Assembly: GCA_964035545.1 (NCBI GenBank)
Contig: OZ037768.1
Span: 9,270,741-9,334,740, forward strand
Direction of reading: 5' to 3'
Length of the DNA: 64,000 nucleotides
Source of the DNA: Bugula neritina
Lineage: Eukaryota; Animalia; Bryozoa
Shown: positions 29,101 through 38,100 of the stretch, one piece after another
Layout: each line of letters opens with the position of its first letter
Numbering within the stretch: position 1 is the first letter of the stretch
Made by a program: the position numbers and the translations under genes
Notes under the pieces: generated by a model
The model's database searches: none
What the model saw: the letters and a program-made list of their open reading frames with translations, nothing else
Told to the model about the DNA's origin: nothing

Positions 29101-32100
29101 AATAAGAAAATATACTTGGAATAATATCTTGCATATTACTACAACTAGATTCAATCAAGCCCACATAATTACTATAATATGTATAATAAATATAATATAG
29201 TAATCAGAACTGCAGTTAGCCTATTGTGCTGATGTTTCAATGGTTAGACTGCACAGCTAAACCACAAATAAAGATCGTGACAGGATTTTGTTTACACTCA
29301 GAAAACCACTCAAACTGCAAGAAATACTGCACATATCATATCTGCTGACCGAGCCACTTGCATTACTCTAATGAGTTTGTTATGATAAAAGCATATTAGA
29401 TTATGGTAAAAGATAGTTCCAAGTATTCCCAGCAAAGTACACACAGCTCTAGAATGAGTTCCTTAGTACAAACTAGCAAACCTACCGGATGGTCCAACTA
29501 GGGTGCCAGTGACCTCAGCCTCCCCTCCACTTTCTGTGTGAACCAAGATATCGGCAACATCTTGCACTCTCACCCCCTTACCCTGAACACCTCTGCCAGT
29601 GGCATAGACCTTCTTCGGTTCAGTTGCTGGAACAAACAAAATGCACATTCAGTCTGAAATAAAGGTCAGTGGAAAACCAGCCATATTTCATAGTGTAGGC
29701 TGTAAACAATAACAAGCCATAGCCCATTTAAAAAGTCATATTTCTGCATCAGTTAGTAAAGAAAAACTTATGTCGCCATTAGTCAGCTTTACAGCTTTAC
29801 GTGAGATATTTGACAGTGTGAGCTAAGCCCTCCAGGAAGAAGTAAAGTTCAGTTTTGTAATATTTGTATTGTACATTTTTGTTAGGTTATAAAGAGTGAA
29901 TACAAAAAAGTGCCAATACACTAGCATACTTGTGCAAATATTTGCACAGGCTTGTTGACAGAGGTTACATTTATGCTGAATTCCTGCATCACAAGACTAG
30001 GTTGAAGTAGAGTTTTAAGCTTGTGTACAAATTTGACACTTCCTCTGTAAAATTCAAGTAATACTTAAACGATGCATTACAATTTTGAAACGACAGCTGC
30101 AAAACCCATCACAAAAACTGTGAGTTGCAATGTAGGATATTAAGGTCACCAGTGTTGAGCTGTGACTGCCATCAATCAAAACCTGTCTCATTTATCACAG
30201 ATTCATTGAGTTTGAAAAGCCAGAAATACTATTCCATAATCGGCACATTAAAAAAAGCTTCAGGAATCAACTGGAAAACAATGAAAATGGCAAAGAAATC
30301 AACTTACGGGCACCAATCATGACTGTGTATGGACTGAGTGGGATCTCTTTGCCAGCGAAATAGATATGTACTGAATATCTACCAGTCTCCTTAGTCATGT
30401 ACTCTACGTAGTAGGTTGTCTCAGAGGACTTGCTGATCCTTGGTTTGCAAGTGTCCTTGTGTCCATGTCCATCAACAATGATAACCTCAATGTTACCCAC
30501 ACCAGCACCTGTGTATAAACAGTGACACAATTTAAAAATGAAATATGGGAGAGAAATGGGTCAGAGTGTGTATTTGCATCTAAAGTTGATTAATTTCAAT
30601 GGTTGGCGTCCCAAATCACTATAGCGTGAAATCATGTAGTCAAACAGTTTGCCTAATCTTCCCTAGTAATAAAATATAATTTAAAATTCAGATTTTGAGC
30701 ATAGCGCAAGTAGAAGTGTAAACTTCAATAAGCATAAAGAAGTTTTGAGTAGAAGTGAACAGTTTTTCACAAGAAGACAAGCACAACTGGGGAATTAAAC
30801 ATGCTACACATGTGCAAAGTTAGTACAGTAATAGTATAACACAATCGGAATTAAAATAACACAGCCGGCTGTTGATATATCAGATGCAAGGGGTAGATAG
30901 TGATCACGTATAATGCTGTGCTCCATATGTTGATAAGTTCGCAATTTAACCCCAGTTCAATTAACTATTTATCTCAGTTTACTATGCACCGTTCCTATGC
31001 AATGCAAGTACTCAGTCAGGACTGAGGTGTGGCTGCATAACTTGCAGGTTTACATTTCTCAATTAGTCACCAGCCAGTAACTTTTTCCCATGAAAGAGCA
31101 TTCAGTCAGTGTTATTGTTGATCACCAAAGGAAATGGGCAAGGTATGATAAAATAGCATGTGGGTGTATCAAGACTAATTCCAAAAGATCTTGGCAACAC
31201 AAAGAAGTCATTCATGCGGGTAGCCATAAAGGGGGGGTTAGAAGAACATTATTGGAATGAATTCCATCATAAAAATAGTACCTTGCAGAGCCTCTAAAAT
31301 CAATGATAAATTATATAAAATTGAAGCTTGGTGAAATAATATTATATGGGTCTTATCAAATGAAAATTAGTAACTGCAAGCCCTATGATTCATCAGATGT
31401 TTGTTTCTCTGCATTGTTTGCAGTTAGCAAACAAAATGTTATCAAACATATCCTAGCGTAACATACTGCAGGATCTCTACTGTAGTTTTTAATTTCTAAG
31501 TGCCCTATTAAATGTAACATGATATAAATAAATTCCACTGCCATTACCCCACACCACCTAATAACCTAATGCAAAGGCTGACTAATTACAGCATATTTTT
31601 GTCAAAACCTATGACTCAAAAGGTAAATATTATAACATTTTCTGAAAAATCACATTGACAGAGTTTTGTTGGAGAGCAGAAAACGCAGCTAAAGTCATCA
31701 CTGCTACCCCAAATGTACTCTAGGTGTTTATAACATTTAGAGAGAACCTGCAACTGCCTGCAAGACAAAGTGAAATTTTACATTACATCCAAAATCTGGG
31801 GGTGTCTTTCCAATTTCCAGAGTCAAATGTGTATAAGATGGTTCAGCAGGTAGAATAATTGTATATATAATTTTGGAGCACTCAGTTTCAAAAGAGACTT
31901 GTGGTGAGAAACAGCTATACCTACAAAACCGGTGCCCTCCAGCTAACTAAAGCAAGGCTAAGGCAGCTGATCTCCTTTGAGTAAAATAATAGTAGGTAAA
32001 AATATCTAACATACTTTCACCAGAGATGCAGGGTGTAAGAACTAATAACTACTGACCAGTCTAGTTGGGTGGTACATCATCTACACTACAGAGGTATGCT

Positions 32101-35100
32101 GGCTGACTAATCCACCCACTTGGGTATCTCAGGAATGCTGATTATAATGATAGAGTGGAAAACAATTACCTTCTGTAAACACTTCGAAATAAGTTTTCTT
32201 GCCGCACTGCACACCAGTAGCTTCCAAGCCAGGCCCTACAGCAGTCACTTTCTCTGCATCTCCAGCCGCACCTTCAACCTTCACCTTGTACGGGCTCTTT
32301 GGGATTTCTTTTCCAGCAAATTTGATGATGACCTAATAGCAGCAACATTAGATATCTCAACCAACACTGCAATTTATACCTACAGCTGTTATGTAGGAAA
32401 CATGAGAATATCAGAGACGTAGAACGGCTGCCATGACAAAATAGTACAATCATACCTCCAATAAAATTGAAATATTATACAAAAAAGTCATCTTAGTTTA
32501 CACAACATCATTTGTTAACTAGTCTAAGTACAACTTGATTCACCTGGTGATTAAGTATGCTGTGACACCTTGCATATGCAGATAGTAGTAACTCAGACGA
32601 AATAATTACACCATGCTCCATCTACCATAGCACATGTACTAGTCAACTGAAACTAATGGACACACTAATAACACTGAAGTTACTCACTGTGTACTCTCCT
32701 TCCATCGAGGGGGTGTATGAGCAGGAATAAGTAAGGTTTCTGTCGTTGTTGAACACAACTTCACACTAAAATCAATGAAATGCAGAACTCCTTCAGCTTT
32801 TCATAAAAATGACAAAATTTGACACGAGGTTTTAATATGGCTGTGCTTTAATAATTCTTTATTGATAAAAAATGGAAATCAGCAATTTGGGCACTTCAAC
32901 TGCATGACAGAGGATGCATTACGGACTAAGACTAGGTGAGCAGGCGGCTCTTTCATTTTTCAAACATAATAAGGTCAAAGCTCACTCAACAGTTCAACAT
33001 ATTGCATTTTATGCCAACAGTGACTTTCATGGACTGTAAGAAACTCTAGTTTGAGAGAAGTCAAATTTTATAAACCTCCATAATTTTAATAATGTGCAGT
33101 TCGAGGCTTTATACCAAGATGTAAGTTTACATGCTGCATTTAACTACCAGATTTGTTTTGTGGAAGCCTCAGAGACAACCATTGGCTAATACTGACTGAA
33201 ACTCCAGTTCCACGATGTTGGGTTTAGTTTGCACTCGGCAGTCATCTTTGTGAAGTCAGTGAAGTATTGAAGAGAGTAGTGAACTGTAGCTTATCTTTAT
33301 GAATGCCATGAATATCATTAAATGGCAGGAGAAGGGCATTAAACTGTCAGTAAACTATATACACCTAATTGACTTTTAAAATTATCTGTCAACTGCATTA
33401 CCTCTTCAGCTTGTTCATCAGCATTGACCACTTGGACAGTGATTTCTCCACGGCCTGCACTAAATGTCTCAACAGTAAAGTAAGCCGGGGCGAGCGAACA
33501 CACACCTTCAGGCTCAAGTCCTACGTACAGCATAAAGACATCATGCACCATGCATTAACTACATGTATAACTCAGAAAACATCGCATCACTTCCAACTTA
33601 GATGGAGCACAGGCTGCTATAGTGTATGCATTTCCCACACGTGACATACATAGCAAGTAAAAGGGCCTAAGGCTACTCCATTAGAAAAACAGAAGAGTTT
33701 TCACATCACTGCATGTCACAGCAAGGATACTCTGTTTAACCACTGGCAGCATAATATACCAGTACAATAGCAGTACAAACTTGTGCATCAAACTTCAAGT
33801 ATGCATGATGAATCTTGCACTTACTAACTGAAACTGGACCAGTATTTCAAAAAAAAGTGAAAGCTTAGTCAATCTCAGTAGGCCTTTAGCTCTAGCATTT
33901 CAGTGTGAATAAAGAAAGCCCACCTCCCTTTCCCTAACACTAGTATGAGCACAACTAACTATACCCAACCCTCTTAGGTGGTGCTTATCGTAATTCCTTT
34001 GGCTGTGATAAAATCAGCATCAGTCAGTTGATATGAATGGACTATAATGGAAAGCTAATACATTGTTATTGTGATGTTTAACATGAGGTCTAGAATTTTC
34101 TCACCATTTCTGAACGTTTCGGTATGTTTCATAGAACAGTCTATTACTATATATCGCTTTCCATCAACAATTTTCAAATTTGTTACAACATGGAGCTTAG
34201 CAATGTTAACTGAACTGTAATCATGCTTGAAGATATTGCACAAGACAGGTAACACGGGACATAACTTAGTCAGGCAGTTTTCCCACTTACGTTTTCTGAT
34301 TTACCACCAGGGTTTGTAACAACTACGCTGGGCTGGCCTTTGCCGGCAGCAAATGTATCTATTTTGAAATTGCAAGGCCGCCCCTTGCAATTGCCTTTCT
34401 TTTCAAGACCTGAACAGTAACAAAGGTGATAGCTTTCTAGGAATTCATTGAAAAGTTGGATATCCAACACCAGTCAGCCTGATCAAATCTTCACATATTC
34501 TTTAGTTTTGTGAATGCGAGGTTGGCTTGAAGATTAAATTGGCTATTCAGTGAATAATGTCAAACTCAAATTACAGGTCAGCTCTATCTATCTACTCCTA
34601 TCACTCATTTCATAAATACCAGTCAAAACAAAATGCATTTAAAACTTGATTTTCCAAAACATTTAAAGTTATTGGAGTGTGAGCAGATCAAACAAAAGCT
34701 GTTGAAAGACTCATGAATAATGGTGGAGCAACATGAGCATTTATTACCTATGTTTATATGATTTCAAATCTGACCTACAATAACACAATGCATCAGATTC
34801 GAATGTGGTAGGGTTTATACCTGGACCATAAGCCCGAACTCTGGCAGGGTTGGTTCTCGGTCTAAGTGGAGCACCAGGTTTCAGCTTAGCATTGGGAAAC
34901 TGGGACAAGTAGGTCATCATACTCAACTCATCAATTTTAGGATTAACCATCTCCTCTGGTTTTATAAGCTGCAAGTACAAGTGAGATATGGTTTACTGAT
35001 CAGCCACTCTACCACAAGGGATTAGGATCCACCCACAAGCCAAGTCTGGCTACTGTCAATCAGCAGAAATATGTTTAGTTTCATCATTTACACTGCTTTA

Positions 35101-38100
35101 TTAATAGGCCAGCATCACCACATCTCCATATCCTGTTTGAACTATACATAGGTACAGTTGATAGCTAAGTTAACACTAACTACTATACTATACTCTGCAC
35201 TATGTCTTATCACCCTTATCTACATACTCAACAGCATGTTTTACTTCATAATTGTTGTATAGTTTTGATAGCTGTTTTTAAGCAGATAATCATTGACTGG
35301 CAAACACATCCATGTTACAATCACTATTTCACTAAACAAACTCAGAGAGCAATAGCTTACTAACTAAAATCAAATAGTGTGAACAGTACCCCTTTGTGGC
35401 CCAAAAGGATTCTTTTATATTTAACATCATGAGAAAAGTTATTTGTGGAACTCAACAATATTGCTCTGTGTGAGATGTTTCGATTACTTCGAATTATGCA
35501 ATGGATGCTCTTTCGGATGCTCATAAATTTGTGGTTGTGGTTTGTATGAGCTGTTTCTAAATATCTGAATGAAAAATCCATTTGCATAATTCGAAGCTTG
35601 AAAACATAATGCATTACCAGTGATCCACTGCCGGCAGTGAGCTTTCATTGTAACCAAAGCTTCATTTATTTATTTATAATTGAAAACTAGGTCATGTGAA
35701 ATGAAGCAACACTGCAGCTTGGCTGATATCCATGTGACATTCACAAACCTGTGGTACTTCAAGCCATTCCTCTGCAAGATCCATTGCCTCGGTGGCATTC
35801 TTCTTACCACTGTCTGGATTCCAGTCCTCCCAGTCAGGACACAGACCTAGCAAATAAAATGCAAGGAATCAAGCCAGAGTTTCTGCTAATGCCACACATA
35901 TACGTGACAAAAGGCCAGCATAATATTAGAGTCACATGCCTTCTACACAAAAAGCAGTACGAATAGGCTATACATTCTAGTGTCCAGGCAACAAGTCAAA
36001 TTACATGTTGCTTGATGAAATTTGAAGAAGCTGGCAGATAGCATTACACTATAAAAGAAAAGTACACAAGGATACTTTTAAATAACCACAGCTTTTTAAT
36101 AATAAAGAAAAACTGCACATAAAACTCCAGCAGGAGGAAGCAACCTAGTTTTAAACTTGTCTAAACACCTAATGTAAATAAAAAAAGATAGGTAGAAGTT
36201 TGCAAGTGGCAAGTAAAACAATATCAATAGATGACTGCGCCCTAGACTGGCTAATGCAAGATGAATAAGCAAGTCCATAACTCAAACAATAGACTTTCCA
36301 GTTGAGCAAATAATATTGTTATTATGTAGTATAGTAACAATGTAGCATATATGAAAATCATACGAAATACTTTCTCAGGGGTATTACAGCAAACAATCCA
36401 TTCTAATAGTAGCCACTTCGTATTTCAACTTGATCAGTTTGTCAACAGCACAGATTTAGTATGCGTTGCAGCATTGTGTGACTTGTGTAGTATGACTGTA
36501 GCTTGGTAGCAACGGTGTGCATAAATTATCATCAAAAACACAATTTACTGTCAAATCTATACCTGGGCCCACTGAGTCAACCAAAGCACCAATAGCCCGG
36601 CCATCATTCCAGTCGGTGGTGAAGTTTCGCACCGGCAGCTCTGGCAGCTTGTTCTGCACCCAAATAAGAAGCCTCTGTTTGGGTGTCGGCCCATCCTTTG
36701 CATCTGAAACTGGCATGTCCTCCTCGCCTTCCCACATGGGCATAGAGATGGAGTAGTGGAGGATGAGTGTCCATATTAGGCCAAGGATCAGCTTCAACTT
36801 ACTATCAACAATATCTGTACTGTCTGCAAGAAGCAAAGCACACGAAGCCTGAAATATCTAGTATAGAATGGCAAGGCATCAAGAAATACACTCATAGTGA
36901 TTACGGTCACTTAGCAAACATAATAGTTGTTTTTTATTGAGAAACTTTAGGACAGCAGTAATGCAGATATAAATAGAATAATTTTAGCTGACTGGCCCCA
37001 TTCAGAGGCATTGATCCTGCAACTGACCAGTAAAGACTGGTCAGTTATCTCCAGTCTGCTGGTCAACGACAGCCAAACCCTTTATTAGCTAAAACTTAGC
37101 CGCAACTGACTTTGATATGGTCATACTTTACAGTAAAAGTTAAAACTCCAGTAGCTAATCTTCGAGTGCTGTTGAACCCTTTGATAAATTTTATTAGCTT
37201 AGGAAATTCAATTATTTAATTCATATGAACAGTTCATACTTGATAAGCTGTACTAAATCTCAATAATATTTATAGCATGAGGGTTATCTGTAAACTAAGG
37301 CAATCCTAGTCTGAAACCCCAACGCCAAACTAAAAACTCAAGTTGATTGAAAATCTATATCTCTCACCTCCCAGAATTAGTTTACTAGTCACAGTTTACT
37401 TACATACTGATATTCAATGTTGCTTTGCTATAAGCATAAATGTCTGCATGCTAAACTGCATAGTTTCTATACACAGCTTGCAGGTAAAAAAGTGTTTCCA
37501 GTAAATTATTATGCACAGATGACATGCAGTCTCTTGGTTTGATTAATTATACCACAGGAAATGAGGCTGCAAGGCTCTCACTAACTAGCATTCCAAACAC
37601 TTTCGCAAGGCAAGTTGGTGAGCATGGACAAATTTGAGTGTAGGGATTTTATACTCTGGTGGCTGATAGAAACAGCATTCACTAGAGTGTTTAAAATAAA
37701 ATACCGGCAATATTTGCAAATGAACGTTGGGTAATGAATTTTGACTAAAATGTCCCTTTATTTTTTTCAGTGTGCTCCAAGTTGATTTGCATAACTTTCT
37801 AAAAGCAATACTTTCTTTCAAGTGCAGTGGAGGGGATAATCTGCATAATATTCTTCAACTACTACAAGCTTGCAGTAAACCTATATTATAACTTAACACT
37901 GATGTGAGCTTTGCATAAAATAACATAAACCATCAATCAAATGAATGGGCCACAGCCATTATATGATCCACTCTAATAATTCAACATGATATTTGAAGCT
38001 TATAGAAACTAATGCATGGATGCATGATCACAAAGCATGAAGAGCAATAAAAATAAAAAAGCTACTGTCACCAGCTAGTATCAGTGTGTGTCAAGCTAAT

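What the first reader, a model, noticed from the sequence alone, without database searches (positions are those of the whole stretch)
33402..34409. Obligate mutually exclusive exon pair switching the charge of filamin Ig1 next to the actin-binding domain
Seen in sequence: two paralogous exons, both exactly 119 nt and phase 1-0, each encoding the first half of repeat 1 (GLE..G.C...F..[D/E]TF.AG.G...V.V.N). Including both or neither breaks the frame. Exon A has 7 K/R and 3 D/E, while exon B has 1 R and 8 D/E. Inference: an electrostatic switch adjacent to CH2 that could change avidity for acidic F-actin or membranes.
Basis: partly seen in the sequence, partly recalled or inferred. Interest (0 to 1): 0.8.

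Follow-up and report, generated by a model that had tools for sequence, protein, structure and literature searches.

The report
Switchable first filamin repeat, charge-swapping exons
A moss-animal-like invertebrate filamin gene carries two old copies of one exon and uses one or the other, making the first rod domain acidic (the usual form) or basic (a rare form); a conserved Rbfox-type splicing signal in front of the acidic copy probably controls the choice.

Summary
Exon A (34409-34291) and exon B (33520-33402), minus strand, are both 119 nt, phase 1-0, with AG/GT sites. They encode the same 39 residues of filamin repeat 1, at net charge +4 and -7.

RNA contigs show upstream-B-downstream in four runs and upstream-A-downstream in one run (depth 4.45 against 771). 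None joins A to B or skips both, and either of those would break the frame.

Both exons are kept at 119 nt with intact sites in related species, with dN/dS about 0.1 and unalignable introns. A paralogous filamin gene on another contig keeps the same A-then-B pair, so the exon duplication is older than the gene duplication.

About 180 filamins of other phyla, including 60 listed members of ten 90% clusters, show one form per gene.

New here: UGCAUG, the Rbfox site, lies 17-75 nt upstream of the B-type exon in 6 of 6 independent lineages. It is the only 6-mer to do so. This suggests that Rbfox represses B and so selects A.

The charge contrast is conserved in this gene's orthologues but not in the paralogue. 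By fold topology it sits at the pole facing repeat 2. Any effect on actin or membranes is untested.

It is a new member of a known kind.

The parts
34821..34968 (-). Constitutive upstream exon (end of CH2 and the linker to repeat 1); ends in phase 1
   Evidence: Sequence. Spliced to 35749 and to exon B or exon A in RNA contigs. Its peptide is 84% identical to the paralogue's exon.
34291..34409 (-). Exon A: 119 nt, phase 1-0, basic version (+4) of the first half of filamin repeat 1; the rare form in bulk RNA
   Evidence: One 177-nt contig in run X5 joins 34821>34409 and 34291>32765 at depth 4.45. The exon peptide is identical in L008/L009 and 82% identical in L004, with dN/dS 0.07-0.10.
34222..34226 (-). 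GCAUG 65 nt downstream of the exon A donor
   Evidence: A-type exons of 4 of 6 lineages have GCAUG within 65-210 nt downstream, which is a weak enrichment.
33542..33554 (-). Two UGCAUG motifs (Rbfox-type sites) at -33 and -26 from the exon B acceptor
   Evidence: This is the only tandem UGCAUG pair on this strand in the 64-kb window. UGCAUG lies within 17-75 nt upstream of the B-type exon in 6/6 lineages; it is the only 6-mer at 6/6, and 0 of 2000 shuffles reach 6/6.
33402..33520 (-). Exon B: 119 nt, phase 1-0, acidic version (-7) of the same segment; the dominant form
   Evidence: Junctions 34821>33520 and 33402>32765 appear in all four runs laid. Orthologous exons in L005 (-9) and L006 (-6) have dN/dS 0.10-0.16.
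32688..32765 (-). Constitutive downstream exon (78 nt, phase 0-0): strands D and E of repeat 1
   Evidence: It starts where strand D starts in the model.

Best explanation
This is a genuine, old and regulated pair of mutually exclusive exons in a filamin gene. An ancestral exon for the first 40% of repeat 1 (A' bridge, strand B, B-C loop, strand C, C-D loop) was duplicated in tandem. That happened before the whole gene was duplicated, and both genes have kept both copies since. Each mRNA takes one copy. Taking both or neither shifts the frame into an early stop, so only the single-exon forms are productive. Exon B (acidic) is the default. Exon A (basic, and closer to the single form of other lophotrochozoans in its GN and NP.G motifs) is used in a small share of transcripts. 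The likely switch is an Rbfox-family protein binding the conserved UGCAUG just upstream of exon B, in its branch-point and acceptor region. That would repress B and leave A to be spliced, as at C. elegans egl-15 exon 5B. Shown here: the exon anatomy, both spliced forms, selection on both exons, the paralogous pair, and motif conservation. Inferred: Rbfox dependence, cell-type restriction of A, removal of double or null forms by NMD, and any consequence of the charge change.
For: Anatomy and frames. RNA: the B form is in runs X2, X3, X4 and X5 (depths 8930, 5.65, 15.2, 771). The A form lies on one X5 contig that carries both junctions (depth 4.45). There is no A-B joint and no skip-both joint. 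Conservation: unspliced contigs of relatives carry 119-nt A-type and B-type exons with ag/gt. L004 and L005 overlap over 91 nt at 100%, which places A then B 1251 nt apart in one other species. dN/dS is 0.07-0.16 with dS above 1, and only the exons align between species. The paralogue on contig C5 (L003) and its orthologues L007 and L010 keep the same two 119-nt exons in the same order. In the tree, A-types of both genes form one clade at 99/96, a B-type clade is not rejected (p 0.49), and grouping by gene is disfavoured (p 0.049 and 0.065). UGCAUG lies upstream of B-type exons in 6/6 lineages; it is the only such 6-mer, 0 of 2000 shuffles match it, and no such signal lies upstream of A-type or downstream exons. 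Precedents: Rbfox proteins repress egl-15 exon 5B through UGCAUG in the upstream intron (PMC3585155), and RBFOX1 regulates human FLNB exon 30 (PMC6103745).
Against: Exon A use rests on one low-depth contig in one run, and contigs cannot give reliable ratios or show absence of the A+B form. No tissue or stage information was available. No Rbfox gene was shown in this genome: the PF12414 search was silent, but so were its controls. GCAUG motifs also lie downstream of the paralogue's B-type exon, so a simple upstream-represses rule may not cover both genes. The species behind L004-L007, L010 and L011 are unnamed, so the age of the pair is not dated.
Confidence: 0.75

Rival explanations
1. The switch is real, but charge is not what selection acts on. 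The exon swap changes a protein-binding or inter-domain surface: strand C, which is half of the C-D groove that other filamin repeats use for ligands, and the pole that meets repeat 2. That would alter partners or rod geometry rather than avidity for actin or membranes.
For: The swapped exon covers strand C and the C-D loop. The paralogue keeps the two-exon arrangement, but its second exon varies from -4 to +2, so the arrangement outlives the charge contrast. In human FLNA a repeat-1 substitution (G288R) abolishes PTPN12 binding to repeats 1-8 (PMC4654411). The charge differences sit in the A'-B and C-D loops, away from the actin-binding domain by fold topology (inference).
Against: In orthologues of this gene the contrast of about 10-12 charge units is kept in every lineage seen. 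Exon A (+4) lies outside the -9 to +2 range of about 180 other filamins. Repeat 1 is not among the repeats known to bind ligands in the C-D groove (my own knowledge).
Confidence: 0.35
2. One reading: an electrostatic switch that raises (A) or lowers (B) avidity of the filamin head for acidic F-actin or membranes.
For: Net +4 against -7 in 39 residues, conserved in orthologues. A is the most basic repeat-1 first half seen here.
Against: No binding data exist. The charged loops lie at the pole facing repeat 2 (inference). The paralogue does not conserve the contrast. The acidic form is the default, and its charge is in the range of vertebrate filamins (-3 to -9), which bind actin normally.
Confidence: 0.25
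3. Exon B is in effect constitutive, and exon A is a decaying or noise-level relic, or a poison exon whose inclusion with B lowers filamin output through NMD.
For: A is about 0.6% of B by contig depth in the one run that shows it, and is unseen as a spliced form in three others.
Against: The A contig is the in-frame A-only form, not A+B. Exon A has dN/dS 0.07-0.10 at dS above 1, with length, frame and splice sites kept in several species and in the paralogue. There the A-type is the best conserved exon, at 85-97% amino-acid identity.
Confidence: 0.05

Closest known systems
C. elegans egl-15 (FGFR) exons 5A/5B, chosen by Rbfox proteins ASD-1/FOX-1 with SUP-12
   Same: A tandem pair of mutually exclusive exons, with UGCAUG in the intron upstream of one member. 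Binding there represses that exon so that the other is used in one tissue (PMC3585155).
   Different: It is a different gene and protein fold. Binding and tissue specificity are shown in the worm but only inferred here. Here the site precedes the downstream exon of the pair, whereas the paper places the repressed egl-15 exon upstream.
Human FLNB exon 30 (hinge 1) skipping driven by RBFOX1 and QKI
   Same: A filamin pre-mRNA is a target of Rbfox-type regulation, with a functional isoform switch (PMC6103745).
   Different: That case is a cassette exon in the hinge, not a mutually exclusive pair. It does not touch repeat 1.
Vertebrate FLNA, FLNB and FLNC paralogues
   Same: The first half of repeat 1 differs in net charge between gene copies: about -3 to -4 in the FLNA and FLNB entries and -6 to -9 in the FLNC entries. 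The same segment is therefore a site of diversification.
   Different: Diversity there comes from separate genes. Here one gene makes two versions by splicing, and the basic version has no counterpart among the filamins examined.
Mutually exclusive exon pairs from tandem exon duplication in other cytoskeletal genes (tropomyosin, alpha-actinin, myosin heavy chain; my own knowledge)
   Same: Equal length, equal phase, homologous sequence, and replacement of a structural module within one domain.
   Different: I found none described for filamin: 46 papers hold 'filamin' and 'mutually exclusive exons', and none of the 15 listed concerns a filamin exon pair; none holds 'filamin' with 'tandem exon duplication'.

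Membership tests
Mutually exclusive exon pair from tandem exon duplication | Adjacent exons that are homologous and encode the same segment of the protein | tested here: met
   15/39 residues are identical, and both map to PF00630 positions 18-51.
Mutually exclusive exon pair from tandem exon duplication | Same length and phase, each with its own acceptor and donor | tested here: met
   Both are 119 nt, phase 1-0, with ag/gt sites.
Mutually exclusive exon pair from tandem exon duplication | Mature transcripts carry one or the other, not both or neither | tested here: met
   B-only in four runs, A-only in one, and no A-B or skip-both joint. Caveat: contigs drop rare forms, and the A form rests on one contig.
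Mutually exclusive exon pair from tandem exon duplication | Both copies kept by selection in related species | tested here: met
   Intact 119-nt exons in relatives. dN/dS is 0.07-0.16 at dS above 1. Introns are unalignable.
Exclusivity enforced by reading frame and NMD | Double inclusion and double skipping both create a premature stop | tested here: met
   Skipping both gives TGA at 32763-32761. Including both gives a stop at 32283-32281. Degradation by NMD itself was not tested.
Rbfox-regulated alternative exon | (U)GCAUG in a flanking intron close to the exon, conserved across species | tested here: met
   6/6 lineages carry it within 17-75 nt upstream of the B-type exon. It is the only such 6-mer, and 0 of 2000 shuffles match.
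Rbfox-regulated alternative exon | An Rbfox protein is present and the splice choice depends on it | tested here: inconclusive
   The PF12414 search of the own genome found nothing, but the control genomes were also silent. Binding and dependence cannot be tested with these tools.
Filamin (two CH domains plus filamin-type Ig repeats) | An N-terminal CH-domain actin-binding region followed by filamin repeats | tested here: met
   The CH exon hits PF00307 at E 1.7e-10. The large exon hits filamins of many animals at E = 0. The actin-binding exons score highest against mollusc filamins, with nemertean ones a little lower. A solved FLNB chain, 4b7l, spans the same ABD plus repeat 1.

The most novel reading that the evidence does not exclude
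In Rbfox-positive cells (muscle or neurons by analogy), this animal replaces an acidic cap on filamin repeat 1 with a basic one. The result would be a cell-type-specific filamin head with different actin, lipid or partner binding or a different repeat1-repeat2 geometry. Splicing would then tune the actin cross-linker at its first rod domain, which no filamin study has described.
Probability: 0.25. Interest if true: 0.65.

Novelty: new member of a known kind. Interest (0 to 1): 0.5.

Why it matters
Filamin isoform work has dealt with the hinge and the C-terminal repeats, and repeat 1 has been treated as invariant. Here nature provides two versions of repeat 1 in one gene, both kept under selection and both also kept in a duplicated gene. 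They come with a plausible conserved Rbfox control element. That yields a clean pair of proteins for asking what repeat 1 contributes to actin binding, lipid binding, partner binding or rod geometry. It also adds a dated example of exon duplication followed by gene duplication to the record of how mutually exclusive exons arise and persist.

Tried and rejected
- **Competing RNA pairing (docking and selector type).** Inverted repeats in the window region and in the paralogue are short (13-23 nt, 76-92% complementary), differently placed, and about as many as chance gives. No intronic block aligns between species.
- **Steric or U12-type exclusivity.** The A-B intron is 770 nt and all sites are GT-AG.
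- **A microexon between 32686 and 32326.** Read laying printed four letters at this joint. They are an alignment effect of a two-base difference at 32327-32328, which changes Ile to Thr. The real junction is 32688>32332.
- **Search with a Lineus filamin region.** Ranking was dominated by repeat number, and no full-length relative of this species appeared. The 120 proteins still served as single-form examples.
- **L015.** It has one canonical exon and no second copy within 0.9 kb downstream or 1.9 kb upstream. This is too short a contig to decide.
- **Paper searches.** Searches for a described filamin exon pair and for the run accessions gave nothing relevant.
- **PF12414 (Fox-1_C) in the own genome.** Uninformative.
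- I reran it with references only.
- I did not use the large representative-protein search.

Full report
**What is there.** The gene lies on the minus strand. An upstream exon (34968-34821) ends with one base of a split codon. Two 119-nt exons follow, A at 34409-34291 and B at 33520-33402, each with an AG acceptor and a GT donor. Then comes a 78-nt exon at 32765-32688. Translated in the frame set by the upstream exon, A and B each give 39 residues, 15 of them identical. Both match positions 18-51 of the Pfam filamin repeat, and the next exon matches positions 56-77. The exons further upstream are CH-domain exons. The gene's large exon hits filamins of many animals at E = 0.

**Frames.** The exon length of 119 nt is 2 mod 3. 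If both exons are skipped, the split codon is completed and TGA follows at once at 32763-32761. If both are included, the shifted frame stays open through B and the next exon and stops at 32283-32281, early in the following exon. Only single-exon mRNAs are productive.

**RNA.** I laid the contigs of four runs on 32050-36950. The joints 34821>33520 and 33402>32765 (B form) are in all four, at contig depths 8930, 5.65, 15.2 and 771. In run X5 one 177-nt contig carries upstream flank, exon A and downstream flank, with joints 34821>34409 and 34291>32765, at depth 4.45. It differs from the window by 2 letters, so it comes from this gene and not from the paralogue. X5 has no intron depth, so it is spliced RNA. 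No contig joins A to B or skips both. Contigs drop rare forms and give poor ratios, so the firm statements are these: both single-exon forms exist, B dominates bulk RNA, and A is rare there.

**A second gene with the same pair.** The assembly is 216 Mb. Another contig, C5, holds a paralogous filamin gene whose upstream exon is 84% identical in protein. It has the same layout:
- an A-type exon at L003:3193-3311
- a B-type exon at L003:3864-3982
- a downstream exon at L003:4648-4725
Both alternative exons are again 119 nt with ag/gt sites.

**Relatives.** A word search with the four exon peptides found open frames on unspliced contigs of other samples.
- *Orthologues of the window gene.* L008 and L009 carry exon A with an identical peptide. 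They come from JGI metagenomes whose scaffold names carry AY690838, the accession of the Bugula neritina mitochondrial genome. L004 has an A-type exon (+3) and L005 a B-type exon (-9). These two contigs overlap over 91 nt at 100%, so one species has A then B, 1251 nt apart. L006 has a B-type exon (-6) followed by the downstream exon.
- *Orthologues of the paralogue.* L007 and L010 each have an A-type and a B-type exon. L011 has an A-type exon. L013 has a B-type exon, and L012 and L014 each carry both.
- *L004 and L010 come from the same run,* so that species has both genes.
Apart from the cut A-type exon in L012 and the one that runs off the end of L014, every copy is 119 nt with ag/gt. From the run labels and the AY690838 tag I take the organism to be Bugula neritina or a close relative. 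This is an inference.

**Selection.** Between species dS is about 1 or more, and only the exons align. dN/dS values:

| Exon type | dN/dS |
|---|---|
| A-type, window gene | 0.07-0.10 |
| B-type, window gene | 0.10-0.16 |
| A-type, paralogue | about 0.1 or lower (dS mostly saturated) |
| B-type, paralogue | 0.2-0.4 |

The constitutive flanking exons have dN of 0.07-0.14. Both exons of the window gene (dN 0.14-0.16) therefore evolve about as slowly as their constitutive neighbours.

**Order of events.** In a tree of the 39-residue segments, A-types of both genes form one clade (99/96). A B-type clade is not rejected (p 0.49). Trees that group the exons by gene are worse (p 0.049 and 0.065). With only 39 columns this is modest evidence. 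Together with the identical layout in both genes, it favours one exon duplication followed by the gene duplication.

**Other phyla.** About 180 filamins of molluscs, nemerteans, echinoderms, amphioxus, arthropods and vertebrates show one repeat-1 first half per gene. This set includes 60 listed members of ten 90% clusters, among them many annotated isoforms. Net charge runs from -9 to +2. Exon B is in the vertebrate range, and exon A is more basic than any of them. A and B are each only about 45% identical to the nemertean form, while the next exon is about 85% identical. Both copies therefore diverged quickly after the duplication. The apparent restriction to this lineage rests on annotated isoforms, not on genomes, and should be read with that limit.

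**Control element.** Two UGCAUG motifs lie 33 and 26 nt upstream of exon B's acceptor. They are the only tandem pair on this strand in the 64-kb window.
- I took the 80 nt upstream of the B-type exon in six independent lineages: three of this gene and three of the paralogue.
- UGCAUG is the only 6-mer present in all six, at 17-75 nt from the acceptor, and its extension GCAUGA is in five.
- No 6-mer reached six of six in 2000 shuffles.
- Nothing comparable lies upstream of the A-type exons or the downstream exon.
UGCAUG is the Rbfox binding element. In C. elegans, Rbfox proteins repress egl-15 exon 5B through such a site in the upstream intron, which selects the other exon of a mutually exclusive pair (PMC3585155). 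Human FLNB is also an RBFOX1 target (PMC6103745). I saw the motif before I read the scan's notes that mention Rbfox marks in a filamin gene on another piece of this genome. Whether Rbfox acts here is an inference. I could not show the Rbfox gene.

**What the swap changes.** A model of the homologous repeat 1 of a nemertean filamin (pLDDT 92) places the exon-equivalent residues on the A' bridge, strand B, the B-C loop, strand C and the C-D loop. The next exon begins at strand D. The charge differences fall mainly in the A'-B loop and the C-D loop. By the alternating topology of the fold, those loops lie at the pole towards repeat 2. The B-C loop, at the pole facing the actin-binding domain, is almost the same in A and B. 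This weakens 'adjacent to CH2' and raises a rival: a change in a binding surface or in the repeat1-repeat2 joint. Repeat 1 can matter for partners, since FLNA G288R abolishes PTPN12 binding (PMC4654411). The paralogue keeps the pair, but its second exon ranges from -4 to +2. The arrangement is therefore more conserved than the charge contrast.

**Verdict.** A conserved Rbfox-type signal adds a mechanism that can be tested. The electrostatic function remains a hypothesis. This is a new member of a well-known kind of system, of moderate interest.

Noticed in passing
L003:2675-4725 (G000 contig C5, about 14.8146-14.8167 Mb): A paralogous filamin gene has the same two 119-nt repeat-1 exons in the same order. 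Its A-type exon is 85-97% identical across species, while its B-type exon is only 31-54% identical yet stays intact.
   Followed up: yes
L012:729-847: In one JGI metagenome contig (sample 3300003318) the paralogue's A-type exon is cut short by a deletion that removes its 3' half and donor. The other sample (L014) and the assembly (L003) have it intact. This is either a deletion allele or an assembly error.
   Followed up: partly
window 32327-32328: RNA contigs of three runs differ from the window by two adjacent bases, changing Ile to Thr in the second codon of the exon that starts at 32332. Read laying showed this as four letters between the two sides of a joint.
   Followed up: yes
window 14056 and 20661: Single UGCAUG motifs on the gene's strand lie 6 nt beyond the 14062 end of the stretch that earlier notes give for the second duplicated exon pair, and about 220 nt downstream of the giant exon. 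Other alternative parts of this gene may carry the same mark.
   Followed up: no
window 32050-36950, run X2: The run labelled 'metagenomic RNA-Seq' covers the introns continuously at about 1-5% of exon depth. It holds pre-mRNA or DNA as well as mature mRNA.
   Followed up: no
window 34291-34409 and 33402-33520 against 32688-32765: Both alternative exons are only about 45% identical to the single form of a nemertean, while the next exon is about 85% identical. Both copies diverged faster after the duplication.
   Followed up: partly
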